From NCBI RefSeq assembly GCF_000150275.1, contig NW_002060944.1, positions 5,617,102 to 5,681,101 on the forward strand: a DNA stretch of 64,000 nucleotides. Reading direction: 5' to 3'. A model generated the notes under the pieces. That model did no database searches. It saw only the letters and a program-made list of their open reading frames with translations, and had not been told where the DNA came from. Each line of letters begins with the position of its first letter. Position 1 is the stretch's first letter. Source of the stretch: Trichoplax adhaerens (Eukaryota; Animalia; Placozoa). This document shows, piece by piece, positions 1 through 61,668 of this stretch. A program made the position numbers and the translations under genes.

Positions 1-3000
1 CTAAATGACATAACACCACTACATTTGGCCTCAAAGCATAACAGATATGCAGCTGTAAGAGCACTACTAATGTTTAATGCTGATATAGAAGCTAAAGATA
101 CAAATTCTAATACGGCAATGCATTATGCAGCAAGAGGTGGAAATGAGAAGATTTGTGAGGTAAAACCGGAAAATATTATCGGTATTCTACTCCGCCAGTT
201 TAAATAGTGTAGTCATTAGTAGCTATTGTCGGCGCTATGAACCCTTTTAGATCATTATGTAGAATACCACCGTTAAAAATTTACATCTACAGTTATATAG
301 CGATTCTTTACTAAAGTTACTAATGTAAATCAAGACACAAAACATGCATTACCTGAAATCTAAGATTTATCGCACTTACTATACCAACGACTAGGATATA
401 AAAGTTGAAGACGACAGCTTAATTTGGAATATTTAAAAAATTATAAAGTAAAATCAGTCGCAACAACTAGTTATTGATACATTTCTATTCTTATGGTTGC
501 TCTAAGGTTAATGAGAATAAAAGTGCTTTACACTAGAATATGATTTCGTAATCAGTTATGTAATATTATGATCTTATATAGAAGATGCCTAGTATATTAA
601 TATCCTAATATACGAATACTTATCATATACCGTTTAAGTACTGTATTGTATTACATTCATAATGTACGACATCATGACCACATATAGACGACATGCTATA
701 CATATAAAGACATTATCTCAATCCCATCTAAAACCTATAAATACCCTTGTACGCTAACTCGTTAGTCAGTTCCTACGTTCCTGCTATCTCAAATACCTTA
801 TCTATAACAACCATATCATTGTTAGCCTGTAACTTGTATCTCAATAAAATCCTTTATACTTCTATCATCGTCTACCTTAAAATACTTAACGCTACTTAAA
901 GAAGATATTATTACAAGTTACTCATAGCTGTTCATAATAACACCTTACTAAAAAATACGTGGCATTATTCCCTAAGAGTCTTAAATGTTCGATTTCAACA
1001 GATCTAAAAGATAACTATTTGCATAGTATTACTAGCAACTACCATTCCAAGTAGTAAAATAAAATACTCAAATAGTTCGATTTTGCTTATCATGCTTATC
1101 AATCATCATATAGGAATTACTCAACAAGCACCCATCCTTAATTGATAATGTAAATGCAGATGAAATGACACCTTTACATTTCGCTTGCATTGCCAATCAT
1201 GAAGCAATTTGTATCTGCCTGGTAAGATATAGAATCAACTATCCAAGTCAATAGACATTAGAGTAAATATTTTAAAAGAGGTAAGAAGATAATTCAATGC
1301 CATATCCAATCAACTATTATTATAGATTGAAAGAGGAGCAGATATCTTACGTAGAACTGCTGATGGCAGTTTGCCGATTCACTTGGCTGCTAGCAAAGGG
1401 AATACTACCCTGATGGAGTTATTGTTGAGCACTGGGGAGGCAAGATATGAAGGTCGTGAAAATCATATTATAGAATGCAATCATGATGGTGCCACCGTTT
1501 TACATCGAGCAACTCAATGTGGCCAAAAAGAGGTAGTTAAGGCTATTTTAGTCTATATCTCTTCTATGATTGTTAACTCTAACACGAAATTAGTTATACT
1601 TAAGACAGTAGCTTAGTGCGTATAGCTTGATATTTATAACTGAAAAGAAGCGATAGAAATAATTTTTGTAACAAGTACCGGAACCTAACTTGTTTCGAAT
1701 TATTAGTTTGTAGCTAAATGCCTCTACTTGGCAGTATGTATCAAGGATAGTCCTGGTAAACAAATACCTTATACACTTCAAAAAACTAGTCTATAGCTTA
1801 ATTAGCGTTCGTGATTGACAATGGCTGATAAGATATAAGAAGAAAACTCTTTGCAAACAAGTGCTTTAGGTGCTTTATAAAACATTAGCCTACAGCTTTG
1901 ATATATTTAATTGACACACAACAACACCAACATTCTTAAAACTAGAGTATCTTATGCTGTATAACTGGAAAAATTAGTCTATTACAGCCTAACATGTCAA
2001 TTGATAACAAACAGCAATCTTCTATGCGTAAAATATCAACATCTACTTTAAAAAAACTAGCTTGCTTTCAAAATTCTTACTCGACAAACGGTAAGAATAA
2101 CATTTACATGCGATAAGCAATAGGCATCTTCCTTGCACGCGAAATCCTTCGATACTTCCCAAATTATTCCATAGCATAACATTCGAATGGAATAATGAGC
2201 AATAATTATCATGTAAATTTCTTCAACTATCTAACTAATCCTGCTAAATTAACTTGATAGGCTGTCATTTTTGCCTTAAATGCCGGCGCCGATACTTCCT
2301 TAAGAGATGTAAGCCTATTTTTGTTGAATTCTTAAAGAAAAAGTATCTATATTATGAACTATCAAGTCAAATGCACTTGAATATCATGCAAGAATGCGAT
2401 AGAGTTAACGAGTTGCAGTGAAGCCCTAAATAAGCTTAAGACTAAGATTATGGAATAATGCAAAAATTGATAAATTTATACGCTAGGTTGTAAGACTGCA
2501 TAGGTGTCTAATTGTGGAAGATGTTTACCGTACGTCTTGTAGTAATTTTATTGAGATGCTTATATTATGATTCTGAGATAATATTAGATAGCGTTAATTA
2601 TGCTAGTACTGTGAGATTTGTATTGTGACGCTTTAATTAGAAGTGCAAATTATGAATTGATAGCGCGATAGTAAATAGATATGAACTTATAACTTAATTG
2701 GTAAGATATGATTGTGCTTGAAAGAAAATCATTGTGTAACTAATTATATGTAAATTGTGAATATTGCTGTGATAATTCATATAGTCCAGAGACAGTCTGA
2801 TTGCAGTTAGCTAGTCCTTGGTAGTTCTAAGACGAACCTAATCTTATGTAATAAAGTAAAGTTTACAAGGAACTGTAGTTCTTTATATTTTTGAGAAGAC
2901 ACTTTATCACACTAGCTTAACCAACCAATCTACATACGATAATAGTATTGTTCTATAAAGATTGTTAATACGCGCAGTCTCTTACTTTATATCATATAAC

Positions 3001-6000
3001 GATAACTCTTGAAATTTTTTTCTTTTCAATCTTCTAACAGAAAAATGGCTATACACCATTACATATTTTAGCTATTACTGGCAATTGTGAAATTTGTCAA
3101 ATCTTGATTGATAGAAGAGCTGCTGTTGATGCTCGTGACAACGAACAGCGGACGCCATTGCATCATGCTGCATCATTGAATCATTGCGACATAGGAGAAA
3201 TTTTAGTCAATGCTGTAAGACATTGACTTAATTTACTATACAGATATTTGATTATGTTAAAAAATAAAGTAATAAAGCAGCAATACTCTCTAGTCTTCAT
3301 AATTTAGAATGAAATTTGTGAGAGTTTGACTGTTATAATCTCTATTCAGATACCACGTTTCTACAAATAGCAAAATTTTTAATTAAACTCGCATAAGATA
3401 GTAAAAAATTGCCTTGTTCTTCACCTACAGTTAGCATTTACTTTATAATAGAAAAATATTTGACTATCTGGTAATCTCTACTTAATCATTTTTTCAATTA
3501 GGGCGCTAATATTGATGCCATAGATTCAAAGTGCAAAACACCTCTAATTTATGGAATCTCCAGAGGTCGTTCAGAAATAGTTCGATATTTGCTCCTGTCA
3601 GGTAGCAAAGTTGAAGGAGTTGATGCAAAAGGCAGAAATTGCCTACACTTAGCCGTAACAGGATCCTTTGAAGATTTTGAAGTGATTGATCGTCTGCTGA
3701 CGGTAAGATAATCCACTAAATCATAATAAAAACTTTCATCGTATTGACTTTATTCTGACCCTTAAGCGGAAATTTTATACGATTAATTTAAATTTACTCT
3801 TAGCTTTATGTTTAGAAAGAATCGAAGGAGATATTAAATGCTACTGATCATCAAGGAAGAACGCCCTTTCATTATGCTTGTCATAAGGGATGCTACAAGG
3901 TTCTAGAGAGTATTGATCTAAGTGTTGCCATTGCTATCGTGATTACTTATGCTTTTACATTTCGAGCTAATAAGGTAATTTATTATACTGGATCAGATTT
4001 TCGAGAAAATGCTCCAGTTTCAGCCCAATTTATACATCGCCGATGAAGATGGCAACAACTGCTTTCATGCAGCATGCTTGTAATTTCATAGTAAACTAGT
4101 AGTAGCACTTTACTACAACATTTTAGAAGGAATCCTAAGTCATTAACATTATCCCGAACTATTCATGAAATAATTTACAGCACGATATATAATTAATTTT
4201 TCGAAGTACTTAATTATGGTATACAGTACGCTGTATGCACTAACAAATAACAAGTTATTTGTTTTCGGAGATATTTATACCTATTGAACTACTATGAAGA
4301 TTGATCACAATGATGCTTTTATCTGATATTAACAGAGCTGGACAATATGAAATTATCAAAGCATTGATCTGCCACTCTCCCGGTCTACTATGCAGCGAAG
4401 GCGAACGTAATTACACTGCTTTACATATGGCCGTAGCTTACGGTTGTCCCTTTACGGTGGAAATTCTACTAGATCGAGGAGCTGATACTTATAGAAGGCA
4501 AGTATCCATAATCTGATCATCTTTTTCAGTTTTCGAATTATTTTGCTATTAAAATTCAATATAATGAGCCCGCAGTATGTATTATAAGCCTCCTATTTTA
4601 TCTGTTAATACTTATTTATGCATTTATTGGGGGATAAATATATAACTAGGGATTGCAGCTATTCTACGCCTCTAGATATCGCTTGTACGAAAGGTTTTTC
4701 TCATATTGTTGAAATTTTAATCAACTATGGTGTAGATATAAACTCCGTTAACAAAGCTGGGGTAATATTCGCTATATCCGTAATATTAAATTGATTGCAT
4801 GTATGATATCAAACCATTTAAAAGCCAATTCATATGGTACGATTGATATAATTTACTCGAAATCTAAAGTGCCGGTACACGCACTATCTTTTCAAGATGA
4901 TATTTTATCTAAATTACCTTAGATCATGCAATTATCTTAATTTTAACTGCCAGTAACATGCAAATTCTGATCAATATTAATCAAAAGATTTTGCATATAA
5001 TATAATTTTCCTCATGATAGGAATCAGGATTGCACGTAGCAGCTCAATACGGCCATACTGAAATTATAAAGCAACTTATAGATAGCGGTGGTGATCTATC
5101 ATTAGAAAATGTTAAGGGGAAGAATCCTTTAGAAGTGGCCATCCAATATTATCAACAAGATGTCGTTACTTTGATGGTAACCTCATTAAGGTATACGAAC
5201 ATTACTACTAAATAGGAAATACAATTTATTATGTATAACTATCGATATATTTAACAAACTTTATACTAGGACATTTCTATTCGCAACTACTTACAGTAAT
5301 TATTGACTATTATTAGATTGTGAACTTATGAATCAGTATAACTTTAGTAGATTACATTGAGCGGAGTATTATACTTAATAAGCACAAACAGTACAAGACT
5401 ATTTGTGATGTTTCGAAAGATTGAGTGCCTGTCATAATCGCAAGAAATTGCAAGAGAACAATTTCCAGAAATAGTGGTCTTTATTGCCGTTATTATGAGT
5501 AGTAGTGTAAGAGCGTGCATAAATGGGGGGGGGGAACTAGCCGAATAGATATAGTAAAGCAGAATGGATGAAACTTGCAAATTTACTGTTTAACTTGTAG
5601 AACTAACTAACAAACGAGATGCTATAGACACATACAGATAGGTTTTATATAGTGAGAACCAAGGCTGCAAGAAGTTATTTATAAATGCGAATGAGTAATA
5701 AAAATAACCTACTTCTAGGTTAGGATAGTTCTATAATACAATCCAACTAGAGTATAATTAGATTTCCACCGTGTAAATTGGTAAGTGTACAGTAGATCAT
5801 ACATTCGCTTATACGATGTTATGCTACAACACAGTGGAAATTAATCTTACTAAGAATAGGCTATAGCGTATATAGAAGCATACACTACACTTCTAGTCGC
5901 TTAAACTACGAATCTAACAATAATAGCATACTTGGATTACATTCCGAATTAAAAATTTTGATAACTAATCTGCTGAATGCTAATAGCAAGGATTAATTTC

Positions 6001-9000
6001 ATAACCGATTCATCCGAAATATTAACGCGAGCACAGATATAGTAGCTACGCGTTTGCAATATTTTCCTTATTAAATTGATAACAAAATCAATCTATAAAT
6101 CATTTACGTGTGTATCCAACTATCAGGGAAAAGGATCTCTTATTAAAAGTTGGAGAAGGAGACATAACAACTTTTCAATCTATCATTCTAGCGATGCCAG
6201 AAGTAGCCGAGGTTATATTTATTATATATAAAATTTTTACTAAAACTACGTCACTATATTATAATAGCGATAGCTGGTCAATATCATATTGAGATAATCT
6301 CCACTGAAATTAACTTTTAGCAATCTTTTCTGAATATATTTATGTATTGTATGACCTATTCAATTTTACTTCTCTGCAGAACATAATGGATAAATGTATC
6401 ACAAAGATCGCCTCATCAGATATCAAAAATAAAGAGAAAATTATGGTAAATTTCATAACTGATATGCATCTTAGTATAATTAGCCTGCAGCCAAATCAAA
6501 TGACATTTTAAGCTCTTAAATACTAAAGTTGTCATCAGATTATGCAGTATTTCGAGATGTATTAACCAAGAGTCAGATTTGGTAAAGCTCTGCAACAAAT
6601 CTTTGCATAATCGCTATATTTTTTGTTTTCAATGAAAATATTATCCTTCCAAACTTGAACAATTTATTTCTTTGTAGCCTAACTTCATGTTTGTCTGTAT
6701 TTTTGCCTTAAGGTCCAATATGACTGTACATTACTTGAGCCTGGTATTGAATTTGAATATTCCCATGGAGCTCCAAATGGAATCGGTAGCTTTAATGCTT
6801 TATTGGTGAATATGAAACTTTACGTCCTGTTTATCACTACAATTTTCAATTTTTATCTATAAATTCCTTTCAGTTGAATATATGTTATAGCAGTATTATA
6901 GTTACGGTACATGTAAGTTAGTTAGTTTGTATTTTTAGCAACATTTTAAGATAAATACCAATATCAGAAGCCAAATATTAACCCAAAATCTAATAAAACC
7001 ATCTGCATCTCCATATATGCCATCTACATTAGGTATAATATTAAATTTATATTATAAATTGCTTGCTATGTATTATATTCCGTCAAGCAAGTATTTCTAA
7101 TTAAAAGCGTTATAAACGGCTATCATCGAAGTATATATGAGTATACATACAATATTCTTACCCAGCAAGAGGTGGCTAGTAAAATAAAATCAAGTACCAT
7201 AACTCGTACTGAAAGCTGAACAATGACGTACACTGAAATATTGTGAAATAAACTCTCATTTGATTGTATTCCATACTTTGTAAATAGCCTAGTGAAACAT
7301 AAAGCTAAGGAACAATGCTACTGCACCTTTCTTAGTAGTTCAATAGTATTTTAGCACATTCAGTGACGTAAGTATAGAACTGAAAGAATGATCTGGCCAA
7401 GTAACAATCATTGCATTACTTCATACCAATATTAATAATTGTTGCACTAAGGATCTCATTCTCTTAGACCATAGCAAGATCAAGTCGTACTCACTTGTTG
7501 GAGCACCCTTTATGTAGTAAACTCCTGAATGCCAAATGGTAAATACGAAATAAATAATAAAACTGATTGCATATTAGTTTATGCAAGCGTTGTACTTTAT
7601 CGTATTATAATTGTTAATAAAATTTAAGATTTTATCATGTAATGTTTATTAGATTCATTCGTAAGATTTGTATTGCTACTTTTAATAGGAGAAATTATGG
7701 TCGATTTGTTTATTTTCTAAACCTGGTCATCTATATCGCCTTTGTTTCATGCTTAGTTATGTACGCAATTAATATAGAATTGTTCTATAAAAGCCAAACT
7801 GGAAACATAATAGTGTTCAAGGGACTGCAGCCACAATCAATTATTTCGAGTGTATCAAACTCATCATCTCCTACTATAACTATTCCATTTGGCGATGGTA
7901 CGAGTAATAATATGACGTCTTTGCATCATGTAAGTCCATAAGCCAGATATTCAGTTACACGTATAAGCTTTTCATTAGTTTAAAGCATCAGGAGTAGCTT
8001 TCTTGTAATTACGTAAAGTTTAGATACAGTATGCATTTAAAAATTAGAGAATAAAGTAAACTATTGACTTGTATTGGCATTCATACACATAGCCTAGAGG
8101 CTATCCGATTGAAATTATCGCAACATTGCCATAAGCTCGTCATTTTATTTTGTTAAAATCTAGAACGAAGTGTTTTTTATTGGATCTTTATTAATTCTCC
8201 GAATCCTTATTGCTATCTTTTCGACATTGAATATTATTCGAGAAATATTTCAATTAATTCGAGAAGTAAGACTGTATACTGTAGAGCCATCAACGTTAGG
8301 TTTTTTTAAAGCTGTAATTTTCGTATCATTCACTCAAGACTTTATCTATACTAATCTTAAACGATTTTATACTTATATTCTATTCTTAAAATAAGCGAAC
8401 AGGTTATCTTATGTCCTCTGAAAACTATTTTGAGTTAGCTCTACATGTTATGGTCATCATATTCATTACGAGTGGCAACACTAATACAACTGTATGGTCC
8501 ATTGGTAGCATTGCCATCCAGATGTCAATTCTCGAATTAGTCATGTTTCTAAGAAAGTAAATTAAGAGCCTTTTTTCTGGCAACATTTCGAGTATAAATT
8601 GTATTTGATATACCGGATTAGTATTATAACTCGTCAATAATGTGAAAATTCATTTACAAATGTAGTTAGAATTTAAAATAGTACCGTATTAGAATAAATC
8701 ATAAATTTCGGTATTTAATTATATCGGTAAATAGTGAATTGACATTTATCGCGTAATTGAAGTAGCAAATGTTCATTAATAGGCTACCAGTCATTGGAAA
8801 GTATGTGCTGATGATACGAGCTATGATTGAAACCATTTTAAAGGTATGCTCATATGCAATCGCAGCTAAGATAGCATCAATCATCGTAATATAATTTTTA
8901 TAATATTAATGTAGAACGGTTTAGTTATTTAGCGTTTTACGAATTGTCAATCTGAAATGTCCACAGCTCATCACTAAAGTATTAGCCATTTTCAATTAGG

Positions 9001-10498
9001 TACTCATTATTGTACTTATATTGGTGTTTGGCTTTGCTGTCAGCTTTAATATGCTATGTAATAATCAGGTTTGTATATTAGTTATGTAGGATTCCAATTT
9101 CAATATACAGACGTACGGTCTACTTGTATTGAATCAACCTTTGTCACCAATACCGCAATTATAATTAAAGTAATGATGTAAACGTCAGTATAATCTATAA
9201 TTTTTCTCTAAATAATCATTACTAATGCTCTAAGTTTCTAATAATACCAGGCAGCATTCTACAACTTGCCTCTATCGTTTATTAAAGTCATTGATATGAT
9301 GATCGGCGAGATCGACTATAACGATCTCTTCCTAGATGGCATCAAGCGCGGAATAATTGCTTTCCCAGCTGGCGTGGTGGCATTAATTCTACTAATGATT
9401 TTCATCTTGATGATGCCGATATTAATCATGAATTTGATGGTAGCACTATTCAAAATACTTTATATTAATGAACGCAATAAGTGAATTAGGATAATTTTCG
9501 TCTTATTTATGCACAGATTGGTTTAGCTGTAGGAGACATCGCAGAAATGGAAAAGCAAGCTTCACGACGTCGATTAGTAGATTTGGTTTATTTTTTTACC
9601 GGCATCGAAAAAAGTTTGCCCAAATATTTACGTAGAAGCTGTAAATTGATCAAGTTTGCTTGTACTGAAAAGGGAGATATAGAGGTATCATATAATCTTT
9701 CATTCTAGCAGTTACTAGCCTAGGCATAAAGTCATTCTGTTGATCTCTGACACTAATTTCTACATATACTGGTTGTTACGTTTTCCAAACTCTTCTACTT
9801 TGTAATAAGGAAGATTTGATAGAAATCTCCAGACGAGTCCAGTAGAGCTAGAGTATAGAACTAAACTTTGTTGTCCTTACTATACCGTTATACAGTCGAA
9901 CAAAGCATAACAGTTTACTAACGGCATATTGCAAATATCAATAAATGCGATAACATTCTTAAAAATAAAATAACAGCCGATAATTAATTCATGATAAATG
10001 ATAATATATCAGAAACGTATTCAGGCAACTATTTTACCTATAACTTCTTCTAGGAAGTTACATACTACAGATTTTATACCTAAGTGATTGTGTTACTGTA
10101 GTCAAACAGAATAAGTGAAAGTTGAAATGAGCTTATAATATAGAAACTATATTGACATGACTAACGAAAATCTTATTTCGTAACACTGGCACAGAAATTG
10201 CAATTATGGAATATTACAAATAACTTTTACTGTTACTTTACTCGTATAATCTAAATAGGTCAATAAATTAGATGCAAACGAAGTTAGGCAGCAAAAATAC
10301 TATGAAGATATTAAGGAACAGATAGGAAAAATCGAGCGTATACTATTACAGCAGCAATTAAGGTTTATTGAAAGCAACATAGATTATCGCATTAACTGTT
10401 ACACTCATATCTTTATATCAACTTCATTTTTTAAACATTGCAGGCTAGAATCTCTCGAATCTGAATTACATTCCGTAAAAGCATCTGAATCTCCATAA
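1..10498 (+). CDS. TRPA1-like: TRPA1-like ankyrin-repeat TRP cation channel, paralog 1 (multi-exon, 5' end outside the window)
   Basis: 24 hand-spliced exons stay in frame. Ankyrin exons include <1-159 (TPLHLASKHN), 1114-1221, 1326-1532, 3041-3214 and 5021-5190. Also present: pre-S1 exon 7468-7538 (LLEHPLCSKLLNAKW), pore exon 9251-9439 (DMMIGEIDY...MPILIMNLM), S6/TRP-like exon 9517-9684 (IGLAVGDIAEMEKQA) and last exon 10444-10498 ending KASESP-TAA. NLxIGLAVGDI is the TRPA S6 signature. Confidence 0.93.
559..915 (+). mobile_element. Solo LTR of an LTR retrotransposon (copy A) in an intron of paralog 1
   Basis: 357 bp, starts TGTAA and ends TTACA. Perfect 5-bp target-site duplication AGTTA (554-558 / 916-920). 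Internal TATAAATA at 736-743 and AATAAA at 843-848 are in LTR order. A near-identical inverted copy lies at 27734-28091. Confidence 0.9.
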
Positions 10499-11446: not shown

Positions 11447-11528
11447 TCTGTGAGAAGGTAATTTTACTTCTCTATAGCAATATAATAATGGAAACAGCGT
11501 TTTTATCTTACAGTATTTAATAGCAGAA

Positions 11529-50738: not shown

Positions 50739-53700
50739 ATGCGAGAAAATAGAAAATCAAGAATAACATCAGCGCGATTACCCAGTGTCCATGATATATT
50801 TTGGGTACGTATCTATGTTTCATTTCGATTTTTTAAAACTCCCTTGAGATAGAACTCATGATATCAGATAGTATTCTTCTTCATATCGAGTCTACATACT
50901 CTTCTTTCCACATCCTTGAAGCACCAGTAAGGCAGATAAATACAAGCAACTTTTATTCACCATCTAGATCCATTGCTTTTATTTCTGTATTGAAATCAAA
51001 ATTATTTGTGTGCGTCATGGTACAACTGTAATAGTTATTCGCACGTAAATGATAAAGGACAATAATTCACTTGGTCGAAATTAGACGGTAGAAACGATAG
51101 TATCAAATACGCACACAGCAGTATAAACGTTCTTGAAAAACATCCAAGACTTGTTTACCACTAGCATAAATCTCTAGTAAACGATACTGTAATAAGGGAC
51201 ATGAACTAAATATTCTAAGTAACCTGATTTTGATTTGTCCAACGATCGTATGAATTCAACTCGATTCATGTAGCAATCTGATATCCATAGAATCGCTGAT
51301 TTGTCACGAATTTTACAACGAGTATTGTAATACAGTACTTTGCTCTTCATCAACATAATTCATATCGCCAGTTCAAAATTGCTTAGTGAACTCACCGAGA
51401 AAGAATCATAGGTAGTATTTATTAACGCATCTGGTACATCTTTATTGATAATCTTTATCCTGAACAACGTTATAATATCTTAATTAAAAGCATGTATCAC
51501 AAATAGTACACGAAGTTAAATTCAATAGACAATGTATATATATGAACTAGACATAAAATAATTGCTACAATGTTACAAGCTACTTTGATATTTTTCTGAT
51601 TCAAAATTTTAGGCAGCCAAATCCGGAGATATTGAACTTATAGAAAAATGTTACAAATCCTCCAATATCAGCGAAATACAAGCAAACGATCGATTTGACC
51701 GAAGGGGATTCGCACCATTACATTACGCAGCACAACAAAATGAAACCGATATGATTCATTACCTATTGGAAAATAAAGCAGGTATCCGTCATGACGGTTA
51801 TTTCTACATTCTATCAATTCCAGCTATCAATATTATACAGTATTCCATAAATTTCTTCAATCAGCTACCGTTCTTGATCCCGCCGTTTAAATTATATTTT
51901 TTTCTCTAAAATCAAGACATGCACTCTTCTAATTAACCTCATGCAATGCCTGTATACGTATTTGCTCTAACACAGTGTTTATTCATTTTCATATTGTCTA
52001 GATGTCAATATTCGAGGTTATGATGATTTAACCCCTCTTCATGTTGCTGCTAAATATAATAGCCTAAGCGCTGTGCGCGTTTTGCTAGATAATGGTGCAG
52101 AAGCCGATGCAAGGGACATTGATGATAGCATACCATTACATGAAGCGGTCAAAATGGGTAATTTAAAAGTGTGCAAGGTTAGTTAAACTGGTATTTTTAA
52201 CTTACAGAAAAAATATGAATTTATCAATTTATATTCTTAGCAGTCTAAGTATCACCTACAATTATCTCTTATTATAATTATGAACAGGAATTTCTTAATC
52301 GCCAGCCATCTCTGATTAATGTAACCAATAAAGATTTACAAACTCCTCTACATATTGCTTGTTTAAGGGGAAAAATTGGTGTATGCCAGTTATTAGTTAA
52401 TAAAATTGTAAGTAAAATATTACTTAATTGCAAGAATCTAACTGAGCTAGATACTACTGACAATACAATGCGATCTATAGTGCTTTGCTTGAATCATTAA
52501 GATTAAGATATTTTACAATAAAATTGTTGATCAATTACGGTATTTATTCATTCATATATTGAAAACATAGTCGGTCGGTCTAAGATATTAATGCAATTTT
52601 GATCAGGTCAGTACTTCCAGCGAGTTATTGAAAACAGCAATTGATGGTTGCATGCCGATACATTACGCCGCAGAGCAAGGTAACGTACAAATCATCGAGA
52701 CTTTGCTCGATGCAGGTTCTGCACAGGGTATCAATTTCGATAAACAACTCCAAAGTACTGATAAAGAAGGTCGAACGGTCTTATATCGTGCAGTTCAAGG
52801 TGGTAAAAAATCAGTAAGTATTTTTGATATAATCGTCATATCGATAAGAAACTAGCAAGTTAAGACTAAGTTTCTGGCATAAATACAGTACTTTATATTG
52901 ATAATTCGTCAACCTTTCTCAAAATACCGAATTTTAGTCTGTATTAGCCTGCCTTGAACATGTGCAGGATATATCCGCTGTTAAGGTATGCATTTCATCG
53001 GTATTTTAAAACTGATCCATCTTTTGCTAATGAAATCTTCTACGTATAAACATCTTTTAACACCGATAAATAGATTTCTAAATTTGTAAAAACTTAAGTA
53101 ATTCTTCTGTATTATCTTAACGCAACAAATTATCCACAACATAGATGGATGGGATGACCGTTCTTCATGAGGCAGCATCTGGAGGCTTTGCTGATATTAC
53201 AGATATCTTACTCAAGCATGGAGTATCTATCAATGCTCAGGATGAGCTTGGAAAAACAGCTCTCCATGCTGCTTGTGGTTATGGTCATATCAAAGTGATA
53301 AAAGCCTTACTTGATGGGGTAAGCATAATCTCTGGCAATCAACTTACACTGAGTGCTCTTACAGCGGATAATTTTAGATACGCTTATATCGCAACTCTAT
53401 CCTATCTAAAATGAATATACACTCTTAAATATAGTGTATTGTTGTTACCCCTATTTAGAGGCTGAATTTGGAAGTTATATTGCTACAACTACTTTTACAA
53501 TCTGCCTCATGCGTTAATTGACGTTTACAGTAAAGGAAAGCATTAAATAATTCCTCCTAGCCATTTTGTTGTTCTTAAGACAACAAACAACTGCATTCTT
53601 AAATTTTACTACTGTATGAACACATACTTTTAAAAAATTAGCAGTGCATTAAGCTTGTAGCAACATTGGCTATGCCTTGCTACTAATTTAATATTTTCAC

Positions 53701-56700
53701 ATTATAATTATACTCTAACTCAAGAGTTATACATTTCTAATTACGAAAGTTTGAATGCCATGATAGCCGCTACGCAAAATTTGAGTAAAGGCCATTTAAT
53801 ATACCATAAAATGAACAGTTTTCACGATTGCGTGAAATTAATTACTAATTTTATGGAATTGTTATGGATTAATAATTGTAGCCACCATATCTAAGGGCTG
53901 CGATGATACATTATCTGATATTAGCGCTTAATAAGTACGGTACAGTGTATACTATATAGACGCCAGTACTGGTAAGTTGAGCTCTGTTATCATATTTTAA
54001 ATCCATTTAAACTTGTTTTACGCTTTTTTACTAACGTCCATTTCCATAAAGCAAATAAAAACATTTGCTTTTAGAATCAGTAAATCTCGTATGATTACTA
54101 TATCTAGTGGTATGCTAACGGTCTCAGCGGTAAAAGAATACCCCAAAATATATGCGTGTATATAATACGTATTATTTCAGCTATATCATTTTCGTTAAAA
54201 TTAACCGTGTTAATGCCATCCTAATCGTGCTGATCTTTCGTTCATATTTTTAATCATAGGGTGCTGACATGCGGCTAGCTGATAGTAGACGCAGAACACC
54301 ATTACTTTTTGCAATAGAAAACGGCCAACTTGATGTAATCAAATTTTTATTAAAGCAAATTCCAAAAGTTGACTGTGTCGATGTGCAAGATAAGAATGGC
54401 TTGCATATAGCTGCAAGTCATGGTTATATTAGAGTTTTAACATATTTGATCATGGTAAAGCGATTTATTTATAAAATACGATAGATAATACTCAAAGTGC
54501 AAGTTTATACGGACAATAATTAACCTAAATCAATTTATGTAATATAGAAAGGAGCCAGATCTCATGTTAACAACAAGGATGTCTTTGGGAGAACGCCAAT
54601 ACATTATGCTGCAGATGAAGGCTATACCCAAGTACCGCCATACGATACAATCTTTACATATATTTTAATTACAGTATTTGTAGGCATAGCCAATTTTAGT
54701 GAATCATTCCATTTTATCTTGAAATTTGACAGATTGTAGACATTCTCTTTAGTAATGGGGGAGACCTCAATTATTCCGACATTGATACCAACACACCTCT
54801 ACACCTAGCTTGCAAGTAAGCCATATTTGACATTAACCTAAATAGTTCGAACAGATATATACTCCTTTAGATGCTGTTAACACTATGATCCCTTAAATAG
54901 TATAATTTTTCTTTTGCGTTTTCTTAATTTACGAATTCTAATTAAAGAAAAGGCGAATTTTCCTGCGTTAAATTGATATGCGATAAGTCTCTGGCTCAGT
55001 TGAATATGTATGGAGAGCGTTCTCGTACTCCATTGCACTTGGCAACTATAAATAACCATGCAAATATCGTAGAATATCTTCTTCAACGTGGAGCTGATAT
55101 TAATAAAAGGTTTAATTGTGTCGCTTAAAGCAATTACGAAAATAAGAATTAGTAAATGTTAGCACATCACTTATTACATAATCGAAATTCAAAATATTTG
55201 TCAAATTTAACTAGATCCGCAAGATATTTTACGTTATATTCGTAATATAAGTTACTGTGTTGTAATGAGATCGTAGAAATGTGCAGCTCTATGTCCACCG
55301 ATCAATACTTTATTGAGTATTAATTGCGTAGCAATAGCTAGGTTATTGGGGAGGCCTATGTCCATTTTTGGCTTCTTACGTTGCAGAATAACAGCCTGTA
55401 AAATGTATCTATTTATGATTATAAGTTTTATTTCTACAGAGATGGTAGCTATTTTACCTCACTGGATATAGCCATCGATCGAGGATATATTGAAGTTGCC
55501 GAAGTTTTATTAAGTAACCGCGCTAATGTTAACTTAACAAACAGCAACCAGGTATTACTTTCAAGGCGGGTGTTCCATCTTGCAATCTAAAGCTAACAGC
55601 CACTGCGGTCCATTGAATGTCTATTTTACAGGATACGCCACTACACATTGCTGCTAGAAAAGGTGATATCAAAACCTTGGAATTACTGCTTCACAAAGGT
55701 GGAGAGATTTTCGCTCTCAATAAAGATAATATGACATGCCTTGATCTTGCCATTGATAACGCCAATAAAGATGTTGCACTGTTACTTGTGAACCAGAAAG
55801 GGTACTAGTATAGCTTAAAAATATTAATTTGTTATTTATTTTTAGTAAAGACTGTCTAAAAATTCAATTTCTAGATATGAACTATCATTATGAAGCTAAA
55901 ACGCATTTAGTTTTAGCTAAACCTTTTAAATATTTATGATTTTAAGATCTTGCTAGCATAAGTTAATTTCTTTCTTGTTGTCTTTATGTTGAATTTTTGA
56001 TTATAGAGCTAGAAGCATTTTGATGAGAACGGACTCTAAGGGATGGACTGTCATGCAACGTTTAGTTCAAAAGTTACCAGAAGTAGCAAAGGTAAATTGG
56101 ATAATTTATGACAGTATATTTTAGCACAATTCAATTTATACAGATTCTTTTCCGTTAGGCCATCATGGATCAGTGCGTAGAATATTCTGGTCGAGACCGA
56201 ATTGCATACGAATACAAAGTAAATATTTATTTTTTACTTGTTAAATTTTAGCTATCTATGAAAAAAACTTTCTTAACTATAGTTCACTAATTATATATCT
56301 TAAAATCTTTACAATAATTATAAGATGAAATGCGATTTTACATTTATTGATCCTGGACCAGACTTTGAGGAAAATCATACTATTGAAATTAGAAACAAAA
56401 TGGTTATTCCAAATCATAACGCACTACAAGTTTGTATTTTGATATTTATTCTAGACGCTAATGATTGTATTATTCATTATGATTATCACACTTTATGTAT
56501 TCTAACATTTCCTACAACAGACAATGAAAAGATTCAAACGGGGTGAATTATTAAATCATCAACTATCTAAGGTTCTCTTGGACAGTAAATGGTAATAGAA
56601 ATAACTTCTTAAATTGACCAGAAAAACTAGACGCTACACGTTTTACCAAAATTAAAGATATTATAAAATATCTATTTTTCCTACTCCTCAAGTCATTCCC

Positions 56701-59700
56701 TAATACAAGGAATATTAATATATGCTATTCATTAACATGCCTAACAGCTAATACGCTAGGCGATTAAGATTGTACTCAAGCTAACATTTATTAAGTAAAA
56801 GAATATAAACTTTCTTCTTATTAAGCTTATCAAAATCGCAAAGTCTGCCATTATATTAAAATATATCAAATAAATAAGTAACTAGGCATTTACTCCAAAC
56901 CTAAGCTTTCCTGCAATCCTATACTATTTTGTCATTATCGAATTATTTTATAATATTTTTCAAATACCACAGCTTTTTGAGCATACTTTTACTAATTTAA
57001 GTTGACAAATTTATAGTAGCTTATCTTTATTAACCTAAGATAATTTTTATTTTCCGACTAGGAGATCATTTGGGTCCTATTTTTATTATGCTAATTTGGC
57101 AATTTATATGATATTCCTTGCCTTATTATCGTACTTTGTTGTGGATGTTAGAAGTTCATCTTACAATAGTACCCTTGTACGTGCTTTTTACCCTAAAGTG
57201 GCACCCACTACCGATCCTCCAGTGCATGTAACTGAATGGAGTAATCCAATCACTACTATAAATACAACATGGCCCTCTATATTCACTACAGAAGTGACAG
57301 AAGATACGATCGACGAAGATGATATTATTGTAATCCCAATTAAATTTTATCTGTACAAATCAATTATAATGTTGGTATGAAACCGATATTATTTGCCACA
57401 TTAATTGCTTAATGTATCAATTTTAATCTTCAATAACAGAAAAAAAAGCCTATCAACTATGCTATTCAAATTTTAGTTATTATATTCGTCAGCGTTAATC
57501 TTAGTAAAGAAGCATATCAAGTTTTTCATAAGGTAAGCTAAATTTTATACCTGGAAAGATCTCTAAAAGGTGATGATGGTCTGCTACTCGTGCGATCCTT
57601 ATCTCAACATTCTGTTATATCATCTTTAAAATGCAGAGTATTTTTAATACTGTATATTAATTCGTGATTATGCAGCCAAAACTGGTTACCTTACCTTTAA
57701 CAGCAAGATATTTAGCATATCATAGTGATAAGCCAGGTGTTACTTTATGATTTATTCGTCAATTTACTCCATCATTGAAGATAGGATTTACTATTTAACG
57801 ATTATTTTTGACTAATTACAGGTCTTGCTAATTAAGATTTGAAATATCACATATAGCACGATACTATCCCAGTTTCCAATATATCATTTTCAACAAGCTA
57901 GCAGTCGATATGATTTCTAATACACGAATGGTAAATTCATCCAACTAGCTCACTAATGATACTAAGGCTTACACTTTTCTATCTTATGGTAATAACAGCA
58001 ACATATTATTAAAGCACCGATGCTGTTAGCCTATGAGTTCTTATCTTACAAGACTTGTCACGTGTTTACTCTTTGCATGCTAGAATATTTATAGTAATTA
58101 TCTTGACATACGATGCATAATCAATTACTGTTAGGATCAAACCCCTTAGAGCTTAGTTTCCCCTTAAAAACTTGGAATGAAATAAAGTGTATTAAACCAG
58201 CTCATGAGCTCTAGAGGAAGCATATATACAGCAGTAAGAAATATCTGGCTGTGAATTTTCTTTCAATGTCTTGCTTTGTGTAGAATATATATACCCGTCT
58301 ATTTGAATGAGAACTTACTAGGATGGAGTAATAATGCCGGCTTTTGAGCAGTTGTGATACTTAATTAATATGCTACAGTACTATAGTACTATCTGAATCA
58401 GCCAGATACTGAAAAAGAATTATCAACGTTAGTGACTCACTAAATTTTTTTTGTAATCAGTTACAATTTTTAAAGTACCAAGCATATTTCCCTTCTCATA
58501 AGGCTTCCTAAATAAGAATTTGATAATTTTGGAATCTCAACTATATATTAACAGATAATTATGATTATCATATAGTGTTAGCTTAGTGTTCTTTTTTCAA
58601 ATCAGTTATAAAGATGTGATTGTTATTGATTTAAAAATGTAATGACTCTTTCAGTTATCATTCAACTTTTTCGAAAACTATTTGTAGGGTCTTAGATATT
58701 TTCGATCAGGAACAAATTACATTGAGCTCTGCATGTACGGATTTTCCTTGTTTCTGATGATCCGGCCGGGCCGTTCACCGGATGCGATGCAATGGATTTG
58801 TGGCAGTTTAGCTATTTGGCTGGCTTGGGTTAATATCTTGCTATTCTTCGAAAGGTAACAAAACTAATCTATTTAATGACTGACTTACGTTAGATCGATT
58901 CTAAATGCTATCTCAGAGTACAATTTAATCATTACAATTATTAACAGTTAAATATTTTCAACTTAGGATATCATCTCTTGGCATTTATGTAATCATGTTG
59001 AAGACAGTACTATACACCTTTCTTAAGGTTAGAATTTTCACATAGTATTACTACACTTTTAGCGAAAGAATATCACGTGAGCTAATCAGAATGTACCAAT
59101 TTATAGGTGATGTTCATCGTTATAATTTTCATCGTTGCGTTTGCCTTTGTATTTATTATATTAGCAGAGAATGAGGTAAGCACTAGAGAGTATCCAATTA
59201 AATTAGCTACCCATTTTCACTTCTTTTAACATTCATATCTTGATGAAAATGGCTGAACGCCAGCATATACTTCATTCGTATAAGGATTAAATTAATTAAT
59301 TGATCTTGATGAAACAGCTGAACGCCAGCATATACTTCATTCGTATAAGGATTAAATTAATTAATTGATCTTGCTAGAAAGTATCAGTTTTTTAGCTACC
59401 TTTTATTATCATCGTATGGTCTAGTATACGCGGACATCAACAGCTGTGTAAATTAGAAGCTTTCAATGTACTATAACATCATAAATAAGCAAAATTACCA
59501 ATTCCTATCGGTCATAATTACTCTTAATCTAAAAGAATCTTACAGTTCTCTTTTTCGGTAGCTTTTGAATATGGTTCCAATATGCGTGGATCTAAAAGAA
59601 ATTTATCTTATTAATCTAACTAGCGATTAACATCTACACTAGATCAGACTAAGTCTTTCAGTGTCGCTAAAATTGCAGGTTACAGTAATTGATTACTTTA

Positions 59701-61668
59701 CTCAAAATTTTATCATTTATTTAGTCTTAAGAATATCTCCAATCGCAATAATAGTGTTGCAGTATATGTATTAATATGCATCTCTGACTAATGTACAAGT
59801 TTTAGTTCTGCTTAGTGCTATTCGGAAATACATTAGATGTCATATTTAGCATTACATCACTACGAAATATATATTCTTACTACCGTTAAAAGGAAAGTAA
59901 ATTGTTTCTTTTCGCTGCTTTTTCAATCATAGGACGTCTACGGTAGTTTTTCTCTATCTTGCATTAAAGTCCTCAATATGATGGTCGGCGAAATCGATTA
60001 CAACGATATTTTTGTTCCTGCGATTACTAACAAAACTATACCCTATCCTTACAATTATATGACAATGATTACTTTGATTGTCTTCATGTTTCTTATGCCT
60101 ATCCTGCTAACTAATTTAATGGTAAGTAAATAAAAACTGAATTATTTGAGCCGGACGTGATGTTCGTAGTATATTTCTAAAAACGTCCTTTTTCTATATT
60201 AGAGAAATCAATTTACCTTTCATGTAATAAATAATATGCTGTTTGCTATATGTACTTACTAGATCGGTTTAGCCATTGGAGACATTGATCAAATTCAAAA
60301 ATCTGCGAATTTAAGACGGTTAGCTAATCAAGTAGACTTCCTTGATGATCTTGAACGATCAATACCAGCATATTTAAGAAAGAAATTTCATAAATCCATG
60401 GCCATTAGATACATCAATTCTTTGCCATACAAGGTTTGTAGTAAGGATATCTTGCACTATATTCAATGATAAATAGCATCTTGTAAGGGAAGTAACTAGA
60501 ATTTTAGAAGTAAAAGATGAATAGCAATATGGTCCTCAGCTAAGGTTTATTTACTAATGATTTACTATTTAATATATTAATTTCTTGTTCTAGTTGTACT
60601 CTTTAATTTATGGTGATGTTACCGACAACAACGAAAGTAGTCTAGAACCAAACGACGAACAATTTAGAAAAATTTTTACAGAGTTGGATTCCCATCAGCA
60701 TCAGTAAGCCAATATAAGCTGTATATTGTAACAATATGTAACTTAAAGATTTTCCTATCAGTTATAATTAGGTTTAAAATCATTTCAAAAGTAAAACAAT
60801 TTGACTGATTACTATTGATTGATATAAAGACATTCGAATCTTATGATGAGTTGGATGTTTAATTTTTAACATTTGGTAATCATAATCTAGAAAAATCGAG
60901 TAGTTTACTGCTACAAAAGTTAAGGCTTCTGAGCATTTCTCAAAATGTATGATAAATGAATCAACTTCGAACCTGAATACTTCACAGTTAAACCACAACA
61001 ATATTAACCTGTATTAACTTCTTATCAATTCTATTTTTAGATTTTGATAGATTAATCATAATTATCGCTGTATACCTCATGTACTACAGTATTTTGATTT
61101 TACTTATTAGATAGAAGAGAAATTTCCATTTTATCAATTCTTTGCAAGCTATGATTAGCATTAGGATTATCGTATTGTTAATATACTTATTCTATAGTAC
61201 TTTAGCAACAATCCCATCAATTTCATCAGATAGAAGAGAAATTTCAATCTTCAATTTTTCCTCTATTCATATTTTTGTAGACAAGCTACGCAGAAGTTAA
61301 GGACACGATTGATTAATCATAACAGATATTATCACTGTATTCGATATAGACTATTTCAACAAACCATTTTAACAATTTTATCAGATAGTATTAGGCTTTT
61401 AATAATTTATTTTGCTCTAATTTACCGCTAGTTCGCGGAGCATAGTTATAAATAAGATGTAGAACAGCATACAACCGACTATAAAGGATGTACTATTTAC
61501 ATCATGCCATAACGTAACATCCTCAATTTATAACCTTAAAGATATTTTTCTGATTGCAGGATGAAAAATCTCTCGCTACAAGTAGATAAAGTGCTCAAAC
61601 TATTATCCGATAGAAAATGTGATAAAGAACATGATTCACTACTTGAGAGCTTGCAAACACCGATTTGA
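50739..61668 (+). CDS. TRPA1-like: TRPA1-like channel, paralog 5 (most divergent from 1-4, most like canonical TRPA1)
   Basis: Probable first exon 50739-50804 (MRENRKSR...HDIFW) splices to 51613 (AAKSGDIELIEK), giving an extra degenerate N-terminal ankyrin repeat; 16 further repeats follow. Also present: ELLNHQLSKVLLDSKW, S4 QWICGSLAIWLAWVNILLFFER, filter NMMVGEIDY and IGLAIGDIDQIQK. Last exon 61560-61668 ends LQTPI-TGA. The start is less certain. Confidence 0.92.
59237..59373. repeat. 66-bp tandem duplication in an intron of paralog 5
   Basis: atcttgatgaaa..gctgaacgccagcatatacttcattcgtataaggattaaattaattaattg occurs at 59237 and 59303, nearly identical. Confidence 0.9.
61030..61395. repeat. 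Degenerate repeat in the last intron of paralog 5
   Basis: agatagaagagaaatttc at ~61109 and ~61228; gattaatcata..attatc.ctgtat at ~61050 and ~61311. Confidence 0.55.

What the first reader, a model, noticed from the sequence alone, without database searches (positions are those of the whole stretch)
1..61668. Tandem array of at least five intact, strongly diverged TRPA1-like channel genes: a candidate sensory receptor repertoire
Seen: five co-oriented genes spaced ~12-14 kb apart with the same exon structure and intron phases. None has a frameshift or stop on hand splicing, although the proteins have diverged substantially and most introns no longer align. Paralogs 2 and 3 are the youngest pair (residual intron similarity, e.g. 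12060-12099 vs 26395-26441); paralog 5 is the outlier. The window starts inside paralog 1, so the array may be larger. Known: mammals have one TRPA1, and TRP channels are tetramers. Inference: this is a lineage-specific, selection-maintained expansion that could tune different stimuli or form heterotetramers.
Basis: partly seen in the sequence, partly recalled or inferred. Interest (0 to 1): 0.85.

Follow-up and report, generated by a model that had tools for sequence, protein, structure and literature searches.

The report
Tandem TRPA channel genes in Trichoplax
The window holds five neighbouring, intact genes for TRPA-type sensory ion channels in the nerveless animal Trichoplax adhaerens. 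They belong to a row of at least twelve and a family of at least 26 that published TRP surveys of this species do not list, though what the channels sense is untested.

Summary

**Gene structure.** Five co-oriented genes lie 12-14 kb apart. Each has 26 exons of nearly identical length and phase, and each has an open spliced frame of 1,067-1,107 codons. G1 is complete at 1,079 aa once an unplaced 8.1-kb contig supplies its first exons.

**Array size.** A sixth member starts 176 bases past the window. The contig that completes G1 bridges a ~200-kb run of N upstream, joining this row to another row. The real cluster therefore has at least 12 genes.

**Splicing.** Four apparent frame breaks are GC-AG introns with GCAAGT donors. 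Spliced RNA contigs from two studies confirm both GC-AG introns of G2, along with nine G2 junctions.

**Family assignment.** The proteins belong to the TRPA family. The membrane part alone matches solved TRPA1 at E 1e-29 to 1e-35, against 1e-6 for TRPV3. They form a placozoan-only clade (100/98 support) outside vertebrate and insect TRPA1, and they lack the three electrophile-sensing cysteines.

**Selection.** The two young pairs give dN/dS of 0.22-0.37. Older pairs are saturated at silent sites yet still intact.

**Limits.** Sensory role and mixed-subunit channels are untested. Only G2 has RNA evidence.

**Prior work.** The scan found sister arrays earlier on other DNA of this genome (s1-756259, s1-778798). 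Database annotation of a sister strain already calls these genes "TRPA1".

The parts
1..10498 (+). G1, a TRPA-family channel gene. Exons 3 (last 159 nt) to 26 lie in the window, giving 990 codons and a stop. Exons 1-2 lie on unplaced contig C1157 and at C1413:5,413,040-5,413,725.
   Evidence: Exons: 1-159, 1114-1221, 1326-1532, 2261-2308, 3041-3214, 3502-3702, 3816-3899, 3997-4079, 4336-4497, 4650-4761, 5021-5190, 6127-6211, 6380-6445, 6713-6805, 7468-7538, 7689-7929, 8164-8265, 8396-8556, 8783-8843, 9000-9068, 9251-9439, 9517-9684, 10259-10362, 10444-10498. The full length is 1,079 aa, starting at an ATG supplied by C1157.
11556..23185 (+). G2, a TRPA-family channel gene of 26 exons and 1,074 aa. 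Exons 1-13 encode ankyrin repeats, 14-17 the linker and pre-S1 region, 18-23 S1-S6 with the pore, 24 the gate and TRP-like helix, and 25-26 the C-terminal helix.
   Evidence: Exons: 11556-11618, 11788-11950, 12100-12275, 13303-13410, 13550-13756, 13958-14005, 15654-15827, 16588-16785, 16867-16950, 17188-17270, 18118-18279, 18389-18500, 18637-18806, 19353-19437, 19642-19707, 19933-20025 (alternative acceptor 19888), 20263-20333, 20434-20653, 20826-20936, 21114-21280, 21397-21457, 21634-21702, 21973-22158, 22568-22732, 22914-23005, 23095-23185. Spliced contigs confirm junctions E1-E2, E2-E3, E3-E4, E5-E6, E6-E7, E7-E8, E8-E9 and E10-E11, plus an E3-to-E5 variant. Pfam finds Ank repeats and Ion_trans.
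25880..35484 (+). G3, a TRPA-family channel gene of 26 exons and 1,067 aa. It is the closest relative of G2 (69% aa identity).
   Evidence: Exons: 25880-25942, 26142-26304, 26442-26617, 27131-27238, 27369-27575, 28127-28174, 28420-28593, 29384-29581, 29659-29742, 29939-30021, 30653-30814, 30922-31033, 31173-31342, 31886-31970, 32172-32231, 32378-32470, 32697-32767, 32858-33065, 33224-33334, 33491-33657, 33770-33830, 33980-34048, 34320-34505, 34895-35059, 35212-35297, 35391-35484. The Trichoplax sp. H2 model P0001 covers 19 of these exons at 99-100% identity.
37844..47337 (+). G4, a TRPA-family channel gene of 26 exons and 1,080 aa. Its first exon, 37844-37933, is inferred only.
   Evidence: Exons: 37844-37933 (best ATG-plus-donor candidate), 38298-38451, 38586-38761, 39429-39536, 39630-39836, 39996-40043, 40361-40534, 40802-41002, 41332-41415, 41501-41583, 42230-42391, 42537-42651, 42765-42934, 43099-43183, 43544-43609, 43903-43995, 44125-44195, 44302-44536, 44704-44805, 44949-45109, 45255-45315, 45523-45591, 46215-46400, 46766-46933, 47073-47164, 47256-47337. 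P0003, which is TRIADDRAFT_53538 [Trichoplax adhaerens], matches the last 11 exons 433/433.
50739..61668 (+). G5, a TRPA-family channel gene of 26 exons and 1,107 aa. It is the outlier in the window and groups with G6 and an upstream-row gene.
   Evidence: Exons: 50739-50804, 51613-51781, 52002-52177, 52288-52407 (or -52395), 52607-52813, 52938-52985, 53145-53318, 54260-54454, 54548-54631, 54733-54815, 54948-55109, 55440-55551, 55632-55801, 56007-56091, 56159-56218, 56325-56429, 56521-56591, 57062-57329 (or -57293), 57440-57532, 58688-58854, 58967-59027, 59107-59175, 59933-60121, 60263-60433, 60594-60703, 61560-61668. The H2 protein P0268 matches 1105/1107.
11951..11952 (+). GC donor (GCAAGT) of G2 intron 2
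   Evidence: It sits at the position homologous to the GT donors of the other paralogues. It is used in spliced contigs of runs X4 and X8, joint 11950>12100.
12276..12277 (+). GC donor (GCAAGT) of G2 intron 3
   Evidence: Sequence. A spliced contig of X4 joins 12275>13303, and a variant joins 12275>13550.
26618..26619 (+). GC donor (GCAAGT) of G3 intron 3, inferred by homology with G2
   Evidence: No RNA was laid on G3.
4498..4499 (+). GC donor (GCAAGT) of G1 intron 11, inferred
   Evidence: The upstream sister gene has GT at the same place.
20434..20653 (+). G2 exon 18, encoding S1 and the S1-S2 outer loop. This is the most variable membrane-region exon of the family. Its counterparts are G1 7689-7929, G3 32858-33065, G4 44302-44536 and G5 57062-57329.
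   Evidence: Mean pairwise identity is 27% against 40-53% for most exons. The loops are 23-34% Ser, Thr or Asn and carry 1-3 N-x-S/T sites each.
22568..22732 (+). G2 exon 24, encoding the S6 gate motif IGLAVGD and the TRP-like helix. Its counterparts start at 9517, 34895, 46766 and 60263.
   Evidence: Alignment A2. The G3 exon matches only TRPA1 chains among solved structures. Columns are shown.

Best explanation
The window is part of one long head-to-tail cluster of TRPA-family cation channel genes in Trichoplax adhaerens. Five genes lie in the window and at least twelve in the cluster.

Each gene encodes a subunit of about 1,070-1,140 aa. It has roughly 16-17 N-terminal ankyrin repeats, a linker, six membrane helices with a pore loop, an S6 gate followed by a TRP-like helix, and a C-terminal helical tail.

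Shown here:
- The genes are intact.
- They arose by repeated tandem duplication within placozoans.
- They are kept by purifying selection.
- At least G2 is transcribed and correctly spliced.

Inferred:
- The subunits assemble as tetramers into Ca2+-regulated, non-selective cation channels that act as sensors.
- Differences between paralogues, concentrated in the outer S1-S2 loop and the two termini, give different gating or partner properties.
- They are not electrophile sensors of the mammalian or insect TRPA1 kind, because the reactive cysteines are missing.
For: Structure and intactness:
- All genes have 26 exons of matching length and phase and open spliced frames.
- The longest raw ORF in the window is only 118 aa.

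Family:
- Pfam finds Ank repeats, and Ion_trans scores 38-52 bits against a cut-off of 25.
- The G2 C-terminal half matches TRPA1 chains at E 4e-53; NOMPC matches only through ankyrin repeats.
- The G4 membrane part alone matches TRPA1 at 8.6e-35 to 8e-29; the next family, TRPV3, scores 1.6e-6.

Channel residues:
- The Ca2+ site residues (human E788, Q791, N805, E808), the pore motif GE(I/L)(D/N)Y and the gate motif IGLAVGD are kept.

Lineage-specific origin:
- A placozoan-only clade of 10 sequences has support 100/98. Inside it are ((G1, upstream gene),(G4,(G2,G3))) and (G6,(G5, upstream gene)).

Selection:
- G2-G3 has dN 0.185, dS 0.85 and dN/dS 0.22 (0.28 by YN00).
- G1 against its upstream neighbour has dN 0.118, dS 0.42 and dN/dS 0.28 (0.37 by YN00).
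- All other pairs have dS above 2 or undefined, yet are still open.

Expression:
- Spliced contigs in runs X4 and X8, from two studies, confirm G2 exons 1-11, including two GC-AG introns.

Organism:
- P0003 is TRIADDRAFT_53538 of T. adhaerens, on a contig of 9,739,543 bases. That is the length of this scaffold.
Against: - RNA was laid on only 6 kb of one gene. G1 and G3-G6 have no expression evidence here.
- The GC donors of G1 and G3 and the first exon of G4 are inferred.
- The junction between exons 11 and 12 of G2, where database models split the gene in two, was not covered by the laid stretch.
- No functional or localisation data exist.
- Only one basal arthropod TRPA (pyrexia) and no TRPV, TRPC or TRPM sequences were in the tree, and its backbone is unresolved.
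- Pairwise dN/dS is an average. It cannot exclude relaxed constraint in one copy or positive selection at a few sites.
Confidence: 0.82

Rival explanations
1. The genes are true TRPA1 orthologues and work as electrophile and irritant sensors like vertebrate and insect TRPA1. Gene number has simply multiplied.
For: Automatic annotation of Trichoplax sp. H2 names them 'TRPA1'. TRPA1 is the only close solved relative. The Ca2+ site, pore and gate motifs are shared.
Against: - All six proteins lack Cys at the columns of human C621, C641 and C665, whereas python TRPA1 has Cys at all three and the frog and insect TRPA1 rows at C621 and C665.
- In the tree they form their own clade with uncharacterised hemichordate, echinoderm and oyster sequences, apart from the vertebrate and insect TRPA1 groups.
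Confidence: 0.08
2. Several copies are decaying or silent duplicates. Only some members, such as G2, are working genes, and the intact frames of the rest are a leftover of recent duplication.
For: Only G2 has RNA evidence. Three genes depend on GC donors. Public gene models for G2, G3 and G4 are fragmentary.
Against: - Most pairs are saturated at silent sites (dS above 2), so the duplications are old, yet every frame of more than 1,000 codons is open in a genome whose raw ORFs rarely pass 100 aa.
- Both young pairs show dN/dS of 0.2-0.4.
- Both GC donors of G2 are used in RNA.
Confidence: 0.07
3. The ankyrin half and the channel half are separate genes, as in the deposited models: 'Ankyrin-3' plus 'TRPA1' for G2, and the membrane-only TRIADDRAFT_53538 for G4.
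For: Deposited models P0153 plus P0002 and P0003.
Against: - The split points fall inside introns that are conserved in phase in all paralogues.
- P0153 reads through a donor, and P0002 starts at an intronic ATG 14 nt before the conserved acceptor.
- Full-length single models exist for G5, G6 and other members (P0268, P0011, P0151, P0152).
- P0153 also uses a GT donor at 11972 that RNA contigs do not use.
Confidence: 0.03

Closest known systems
TRPA1 of vertebrates and insects (solved structures such as 3J9P, 6V9V, 7OR0, 7YKR)
   Same: - An N-terminal ankyrin array and a six-helix channel domain.
- The S2-S3 Ca2+ site, an acidic pore residue, the IGLAVGD gate and a TRP-like helix.
- The only close match among solved TRP channels.
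   Different: - No Cys at the three electrophile-sensing positions.
- Glu instead of Asp in the filter, as in many invertebrate sequences.
- A separate clade in the tree.
- About 25-28% overall identity.
[quoted passage not shown]
   Same: The nearest non-placozoan branches are unnamed 'TRPA1-like' proteins of a hemichordate, a sea urchin and an oyster, with support 90/97. These also lack the reactive cysteines.
   Different: Placozoans are not listed for this group in the text I could read. Membership rests on a weakly resolved backbone.
Tandem TRPA expansions in other invertebrates
   Same: - Adjacent TRPA genes 576-578 in the jellyfish Sanderia.
- A 3,636-aa fused triple model in the annelid Dimorphilus.
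- Lineage-specific TRPA1-like expansion reported in abalone and oysters (PMC12980990).
   Different: Here the animal has no neurons, and the family is large: at least 26 loci in a 106-Mb genome. The copies are old and strongly diverged.
Arthropod basal TRPA channels (pyrexia, painless, water witch)
   Same: Ankyrin-plus-channel architecture and the same TRP subfamily.
   Different: The one pyrexia sequence available does not group with the placozoan clade. Painless and water witch could not be fetched.
TRPN / NOMPC
   Same: A long ankyrin array in front of a TRP channel domain.
   Different: NOMPC (5VKQ) matches only through ankyrin repeats, and TRPN1 is a distant outgroup on a branch of 2.3-4.6. 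These proteins have about 17 repeats, not 29.

Membership tests
TRPA subfamily of TRP channels | Long N-terminal ankyrin repeat array (about 14-18 repeats) | tested here: met
   Ank-family hits occur on every exon tested from exons 2-13. Ank, Ank_2 and Ank_4 cover residues up to about 580 in P0268 and P0011.
TRPA subfamily of TRP channels | Six-helix ion transport domain with a pore loop | tested here: met
   PF00520 scores 37.9-52 bits against a cut-off of 25. The domain aligns to human TRPA1 residues 654-1015.
TRPA subfamily of TRP channels | Channel domain closer to TRPA than to any other TRP subfamily | tested here: met
   The membrane-only protein P0003 matches TRPA1 at E 8.6e-35 to 8e-29. 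The next family is TRPV3 at 1.6e-6.
TRPA subfamily of TRP channels | Falls within TRPA in a tree rooted with another subfamily | tested here: inconclusive
   With a TRPN1 outgroup, all sequences lie in the TRPA ingroup with support 100/100.
TRPA subfamily of TRP channels | C-terminal coiled coil that bundles the tetramer | not tested
   Heptad-like Leu/Gln-rich tails are visible in the models. No coiled-coil predictor or fold was run.
TRPA1 sensu stricto (electrophile sensor) | Reactive cysteines at human C621, C641 and C665 | tested here: not met
   All six proteins have Thr or Ser, Val, and Asp or Glu at these columns. Python TRPA1 has Cys at all three; the frog and insect TRPA1 rows have Cys at C621 and C665. 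Human numbering comes from the PDB alignment and from my memory of the literature.
TRPA1 sensu stricto (electrophile sensor) | Groups with vertebrate and insect TRPA1 in a tree | tested here: not met
   The placozoan clade (100/98) groups with other 'TRPA1-like' sequences (90/97), not with the vertebrate or insect TRPA1 groups. Deeper nodes are unresolved.
TRPA1 sensu stricto (electrophile sensor) | S2-S3 Ca2+ site (E788, Q791, N805, E808) | tested here: met
   The site is kept in G1-G5. G6 has Glu at the Q791 column.
Arthropod basal TRPA (pyrexia, painless, water witch) | Groups with these genes in a tree | tested here: inconclusive
   Only Camponotus pyrexia (P0068) was available. It sits elsewhere on a long branch.
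Diversifying chemoreceptor-like repertoire | dN/dS at or above 1 in a sensing domain | tested here: not met
   Domain values are 0.11-0.56 in the two unsaturated pairs. Only very short exons exceed 0.8, which is noise. Site models were not run.

The most novel reading that the evidence does not exclude
In an animal without neurons, a family of at least 26 (perhaps about 45) diverged TRPA channels serves as a main sensory receptor repertoire. Different paralogues, or mixed tetramers, would be expressed in different cell types and tuned to different thermal, chemical or mechanical cues through their variable outer S1-S2 loops and termini. This would be a channel-based counterpart of the chemoreceptor gene families of animals with nervous systems.
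Probability: 0.3. Interest if true: 0.75.

Novelty: new member of a known kind. Interest (0 to 1): 0.55.

Why it matters
Trichoplax shows thermotaxis and chemotaxis without neurons, and its sensors are unknown. A thermotaxis paper (PMC10498350) lists the TRP homologues reported for T. adhaerens as TRPM, TRPML, TRPP and TRPV only. The reference annotation breaks these TRPA genes into 'uncharacterized' fragments.

Corrected full-length models have several uses:
- They give candidate sensors that can be tested directly.
- They allow proper mapping of the published single-cell atlases.
- They show that large TRPA expansions are not tied to nervous systems.
- They show that GC-AG introns caused the mis-annotation.

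Tried and rejected
**How spliced models were searched.** Searches used single exons by reference or database protein ids. The joined models were used only in local scripts for alignment, dN/dS and trees.

**Dead ends and negative results:**
- The S5-pore exon alone found nothing among solved structures.
- A homologue search restricted to the membrane region of P0011 returned only 5 proteins, so painless and water witch could not be obtained.
- A search with P0003, hoping for transcript-derived fragments of G4, gave only database models.
- The 15 kb upstream of the window reads N. So does everything sampled back to 5,417,096. I cannot tell a real assembly gap from withheld sequence, but contig C1157 bridges it.
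- Runs X5 and X7 gave unspliced contigs that also lie in introns, meaning DNA or pre-mRNA, and say nothing about splicing.
- The first parallel run of my aligner timed out.
- The careful tree with the mixture model was killed, by the sandbox's memory or time limit. It was replaced by LG+G4.
- The apparent frameshifts seen were rejected as real. They came from GC donors, from a duplicated segment in the reference P0151, or from aligning variable loops.
- RFX X-box motifs are not enriched: 14 one-mismatch sites against 18 expected, and none perfect.
- There are no Rfam families or tRNAs.
- Intergenic ORFs have no Pfam domain.


Full report
**What is there**

The window is AT-rich (about 31% GC) and has no long raw ORF; the longest is 118 aa. 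I translated all six frames and compared every stop-free stretch with every other. This gave five + strand series of about 25 short coding blocks in the same order.

I wrote a protein-to-genome aligner that allows introns in all three phases, frameshifts and stops. I trained splice-site weights on 76 introns; the consensus is AG|GTAAGT ... TAG|G. I then aligned database proteins and the paralogues' own products to each unit.

The resulting models are:

| Gene | Window coordinates | Length |
|---|---|---|
| G1 | 1-10498 | 990 aa in the window |
| G2 | 11556-23185 | 1,074 aa |
| G3 | 25880-35484 | 1,067 aa |
| G4 | 37844-47337 | 1,080 aa |
| G5 | 50739-61668 | 1,107 aa |

Every complete gene has 26 exons. 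Exon lengths are almost the same from gene to gene: 176, 108, 207, 48, 174, about 198, 84, 83, 162, 112, 170, 85 and so on. Phases are identical.

**The apparent frame breaks are GC-AG introns**

With GT-only donors, the aligner needed a frameshift at the end of exon 3 in G2 and G3 and at the end of exon 11 in G1. At exactly the positions where the other paralogues have GT donors, these genes read GCAAGT. The same is true of G2 exon 2. Once GC donors are allowed, the frameshifts go.

The remaining frameshifts in individual alignments had two causes. Some came from a duplicated segment in the reference protein P0151. Others were compensating shifts in a variable loop, where an existing database protein matches in one frame.

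**RNA evidence**

I laid contigs of four public runs on 11450-17449. Two runs from different studies (X4, X8) hold spliced contigs. They join:
- 11618>11788
- 11950>12100 (GC donor, seen in both runs)
- 12275>13303 (GC donor)
- 13756>13958
- 14005>15654
- 15827>16588
- 16785>16867

A loose end after 17270 continues with the first bases of exon 11. One contig joins 12275>13550 and so skips the 108-nt exon 4 in frame.

G2 is therefore transcribed and spliced as modelled over exons 1-11. The deposited H2 model, which uses a GT at 11972 and skips exon 4 and part of exon 5, is wrong here. Runs X5 and X7 gave only unspliced pieces.

**Organism and public annotation**

Exons match proteins of Trichoplax sp. 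H2 at 99-100%. P0003, identical to the G4 C-terminal exons, is 'uncharacterized protein TRIADDRAFT_53538 [Trichoplax adhaerens]'. It sits on a contig of 9,739,543 bases, the exact length of this scaffold. The genome has 105.6 Mb in 1,414 contigs. I take the organism to be T. adhaerens.

The public models are fragmentary:
- G2 is split into 'Ankyrin-3' (P0153) and 'TRPA1' (P0002).
- G3 is an 808-aa piece.
- G4 is a 433-aa membrane-only piece.
- G5 (P0268) is essentially full length.
- G6 (P0011) is full length apart from a shortened exon 18.

**The array is larger than the window**

Downstream, G6 lies at window coordinates 64176-75890. It has 26 exons and 1,138 aa, and is 43% identical to G5.

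Upstream, everything from C1413:5,417,096 to the window start reads N. The unplaced contig C1157 (8,106 bp), reverse-complemented, bridges this run:
- It is 100% identical to window 1-899.
- It is 95% identical to C1413:5,412,561-5,413,842.
- It carries exons 1 and 2 and the missing 17 nt of exon 3 of G1.

G1 is therefore complete at 1,079 aa with an ATG start. Its first two exons lie on the far side of the N-run, 1.2 kb behind another intact 26-exon gene at 5,400,729-5,411,795. That gene has the same exon lengths, is 78% identical in protein, and is G1's closest relative.

In Trichoplax sp. H2, proteins of both rows are on one 177-kb contig. The two rows are therefore one cluster of at least 12 co-oriented genes.

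**Family size**

Profiles of two different exons each find 36 places in the genome. These are the S5-pore exon and the post-S6 exon. Of the 36, 26 are strong with both profiles (E of 1e-8 or less for the post-S6 exon, 1.1e-9 or less for the S5-pore exon). Most of the 26 lie in rows on this scaffold, at 0.56-0.65, 1.46-1.50, 5.36-5.41 and 5.62-5.69 Mb. Weaker rows lie on C1410 and elsewhere. The tool states that these are lower bounds.

**What the proteins are**

- **Domains.** Exons 1-13 encode ankyrin repeats. The C-terminal third is an ion transport domain above Pfam's threshold.
- **Solved structures.** The G2 C-terminal half matches only TRPA1 through its channel domain (E 4e-53), and NOMPC matches only through ankyrin repeats. 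The membrane-only G4 fragment matches TRPA1 at 1e-29 to 1e-35, and the next family, TRPV3, at 1.6e-6.
- **Conserved residues.** The S2-S3 Ca2+ site, an acidic pore residue in GE(I/L)(D/N)Y, the IGLAVGD gate and the TRP-like helix are kept.
- **Missing residues.** The three cysteines that make TRPA1 an electrophile sensor are absent from all six proteins.

**Tree**

I built a tree of 53 sequences over the linker-to-TRP-helix region, rooted with TRPN1. I ran it twice: a quick mixture model, and a careful LG+G4 run.

- G1-G6 and four other Trichoplax proteins form a clade with support 100/98.
- Its internal order is ((G1, upstream gene),(G4,(G2,G3))) and (G6,(G5, upstream gene)).
- Its sister (90/97) is a small set of uncharacterised hemichordate, sea urchin and oyster proteins.
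- The vertebrate and insect TRPA1 groups lie elsewhere, and the backbone is unresolved.
- Other Trichoplax TRPA proteins (P0172, P0183, P0201) fall outside this clade, so placozoans have several TRPA lineages.

I left out of the tree all ankyrin-only hits and most of the 120 listed homologues, keeping a spread of phyla.

**Selection**

| Pair | dN | dS | dN/dS (NG86) | dN/dS (YN00) | Range by domain |
|---|---|---|---|---|---|
| G2-G3 | 0.185 | 0.85 | 0.22 | 0.28 | 0.19-0.36 |
| G1 and upstream neighbour | 0.118 | 0.42 | 0.28 | 0.37 | 0.11-0.56 |

All other pairs are saturated at silent sites. Their protein identities are:
- 46-51% among G1-G4 other than the G2-G3 pair
- 43% for G5-G6
- 31-36% between the two groups

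The most divergent parts are:
- exon 18-19, encoding S1 and the outer S1-S2 loop, which is rich in Ser, Thr and Asn and carries 1-3 N-x-S/T sites
- the tail exons 25-26
- exons 1-2

No domain reaches dN/dS of 1.

Introns no longer align, apart from faint G2-G3 traces and a shared mobile element.

**How it most likely works**

Shown: old and recent tandem duplications produced many intact, constrained genes with all the core channel motifs of TRPA1.

Inferred from what is established for TRPA1: four subunits form a Ca2+-regulated, non-selective cation channel. The ankyrin array and the linker couple stimuli to the gate.

Because the reactive cysteines are absent, covalent electrophile sensing through the known site is unlikely. 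The stimuli are unknown. Whether paralogues mix in one tetramer is also unknown, and I make no claim on it.

**What is known already**

- Database annotation of the H2 strain names these genes TRPA1.
- A placozoan single-cell study includes many placozoan genes in an orthogroup with Drosophila TrpA1.
- A thermotaxis paper lists the TRP homologues reported for T. adhaerens as TRPM, TRPML, TRPP and TRPV only (PMC10498350).
- A recent review describes TRPA1-like channels for cnidarians, ecdysozoans and lophotrochozoans (PMC11526382).
- Four full-text searches found no paper describing a placozoan TRPA expansion.
- Tandem TRPA expansions as such are known in other invertebrates (PMC12980990).
- Earlier notes of this scan reported sister arrays of this genome, named the species and estimated 40-50 genes. 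I checked the species and a lower bound on the number myself.

**Verdict**

This is a real, well-preserved and partly expressed piece of a large placozoan-specific TRPA gene cluster. It is a new member of a known kind, not a new kind. Its interest lies in the animal and in correcting the record. The sensory interpretation is still open.

Noticed in passing
window 590-930 (G1 intron 3) and 27660-28050 (G3 intron 5, opposite strand): A short interspersed element of about 326 bp has at least 40 copies in the genome at 97-98% identity, so it was recently active. It is the only strong intron-to-intron match between paralogues.
   Followed up: partly
window 14640-15060 (G2 intron 6): An older repeat family of about 420 bp has at least 44 copies at 73-85% identity. 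RNA-run contigs pile up here at depth 120-260, which reflects the repeat and not G2.
   Followed up: partly
window 12275>13550 (G2): One spliced contig in run X4 skips the 108-nt exon 4 in frame, removing 36 residues, about one ankyrin repeat. This is either a possible alternative isoform or an assembly variant.
   Followed up: no
G000:C1413:5,417,096-5,617,101 and contig C1157 (L010): About 200 kb of N lies directly upstream of the window. The unplaced 8.1-kb contig C1157 matches both flanks, leaving only about 60 bases between them. The N-run therefore splits gene G1 and is probably not real distance. I cannot tell a gap from withheld sequence.
   Followed up: partly
window 48810-49208 and 59237-59373; L004 (window coordinates about 82386-83074): There is a 153-bp tandem repeat (2.6 copies) in the slightly GC-richer G4-G5 spacer, and a 65-bp repeat (2.1 copies) in a G5 intron. 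A tandem array with a period of about 190 bp lies downstream of G6.
   Followed up: no
window 19888-19932, 52396-52407, 57294-57329 and 61542-61559: In-frame alternative splice sites exist where my homology-based boundary and the deposited H2 models differ: G2 exon 16, and G5 exons 4, 18 and 26. Either choice keeps the frame, and RNA is needed to decide.
   Followed up: no
P0146, P0156, P0272 (Sanderia malayensis) and P0004 (Dimorphilus gyrociliatus): Consecutively numbered jellyfish genes 576-578 are near-identical TRPA-like proteins. A 3,636-aa annelid protein holds three pore-exon matches and is probably three tandem genes fused by annotation.
   Followed up: no
G000:C1410:6,780,015-6,841,913: Five weak pore-exon matches (E 1e-5 to 6e-5) are spaced 13-19 kb apart on one strand. 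This looks like another, more distant row of TRPA-like genes.
   Followed up: no
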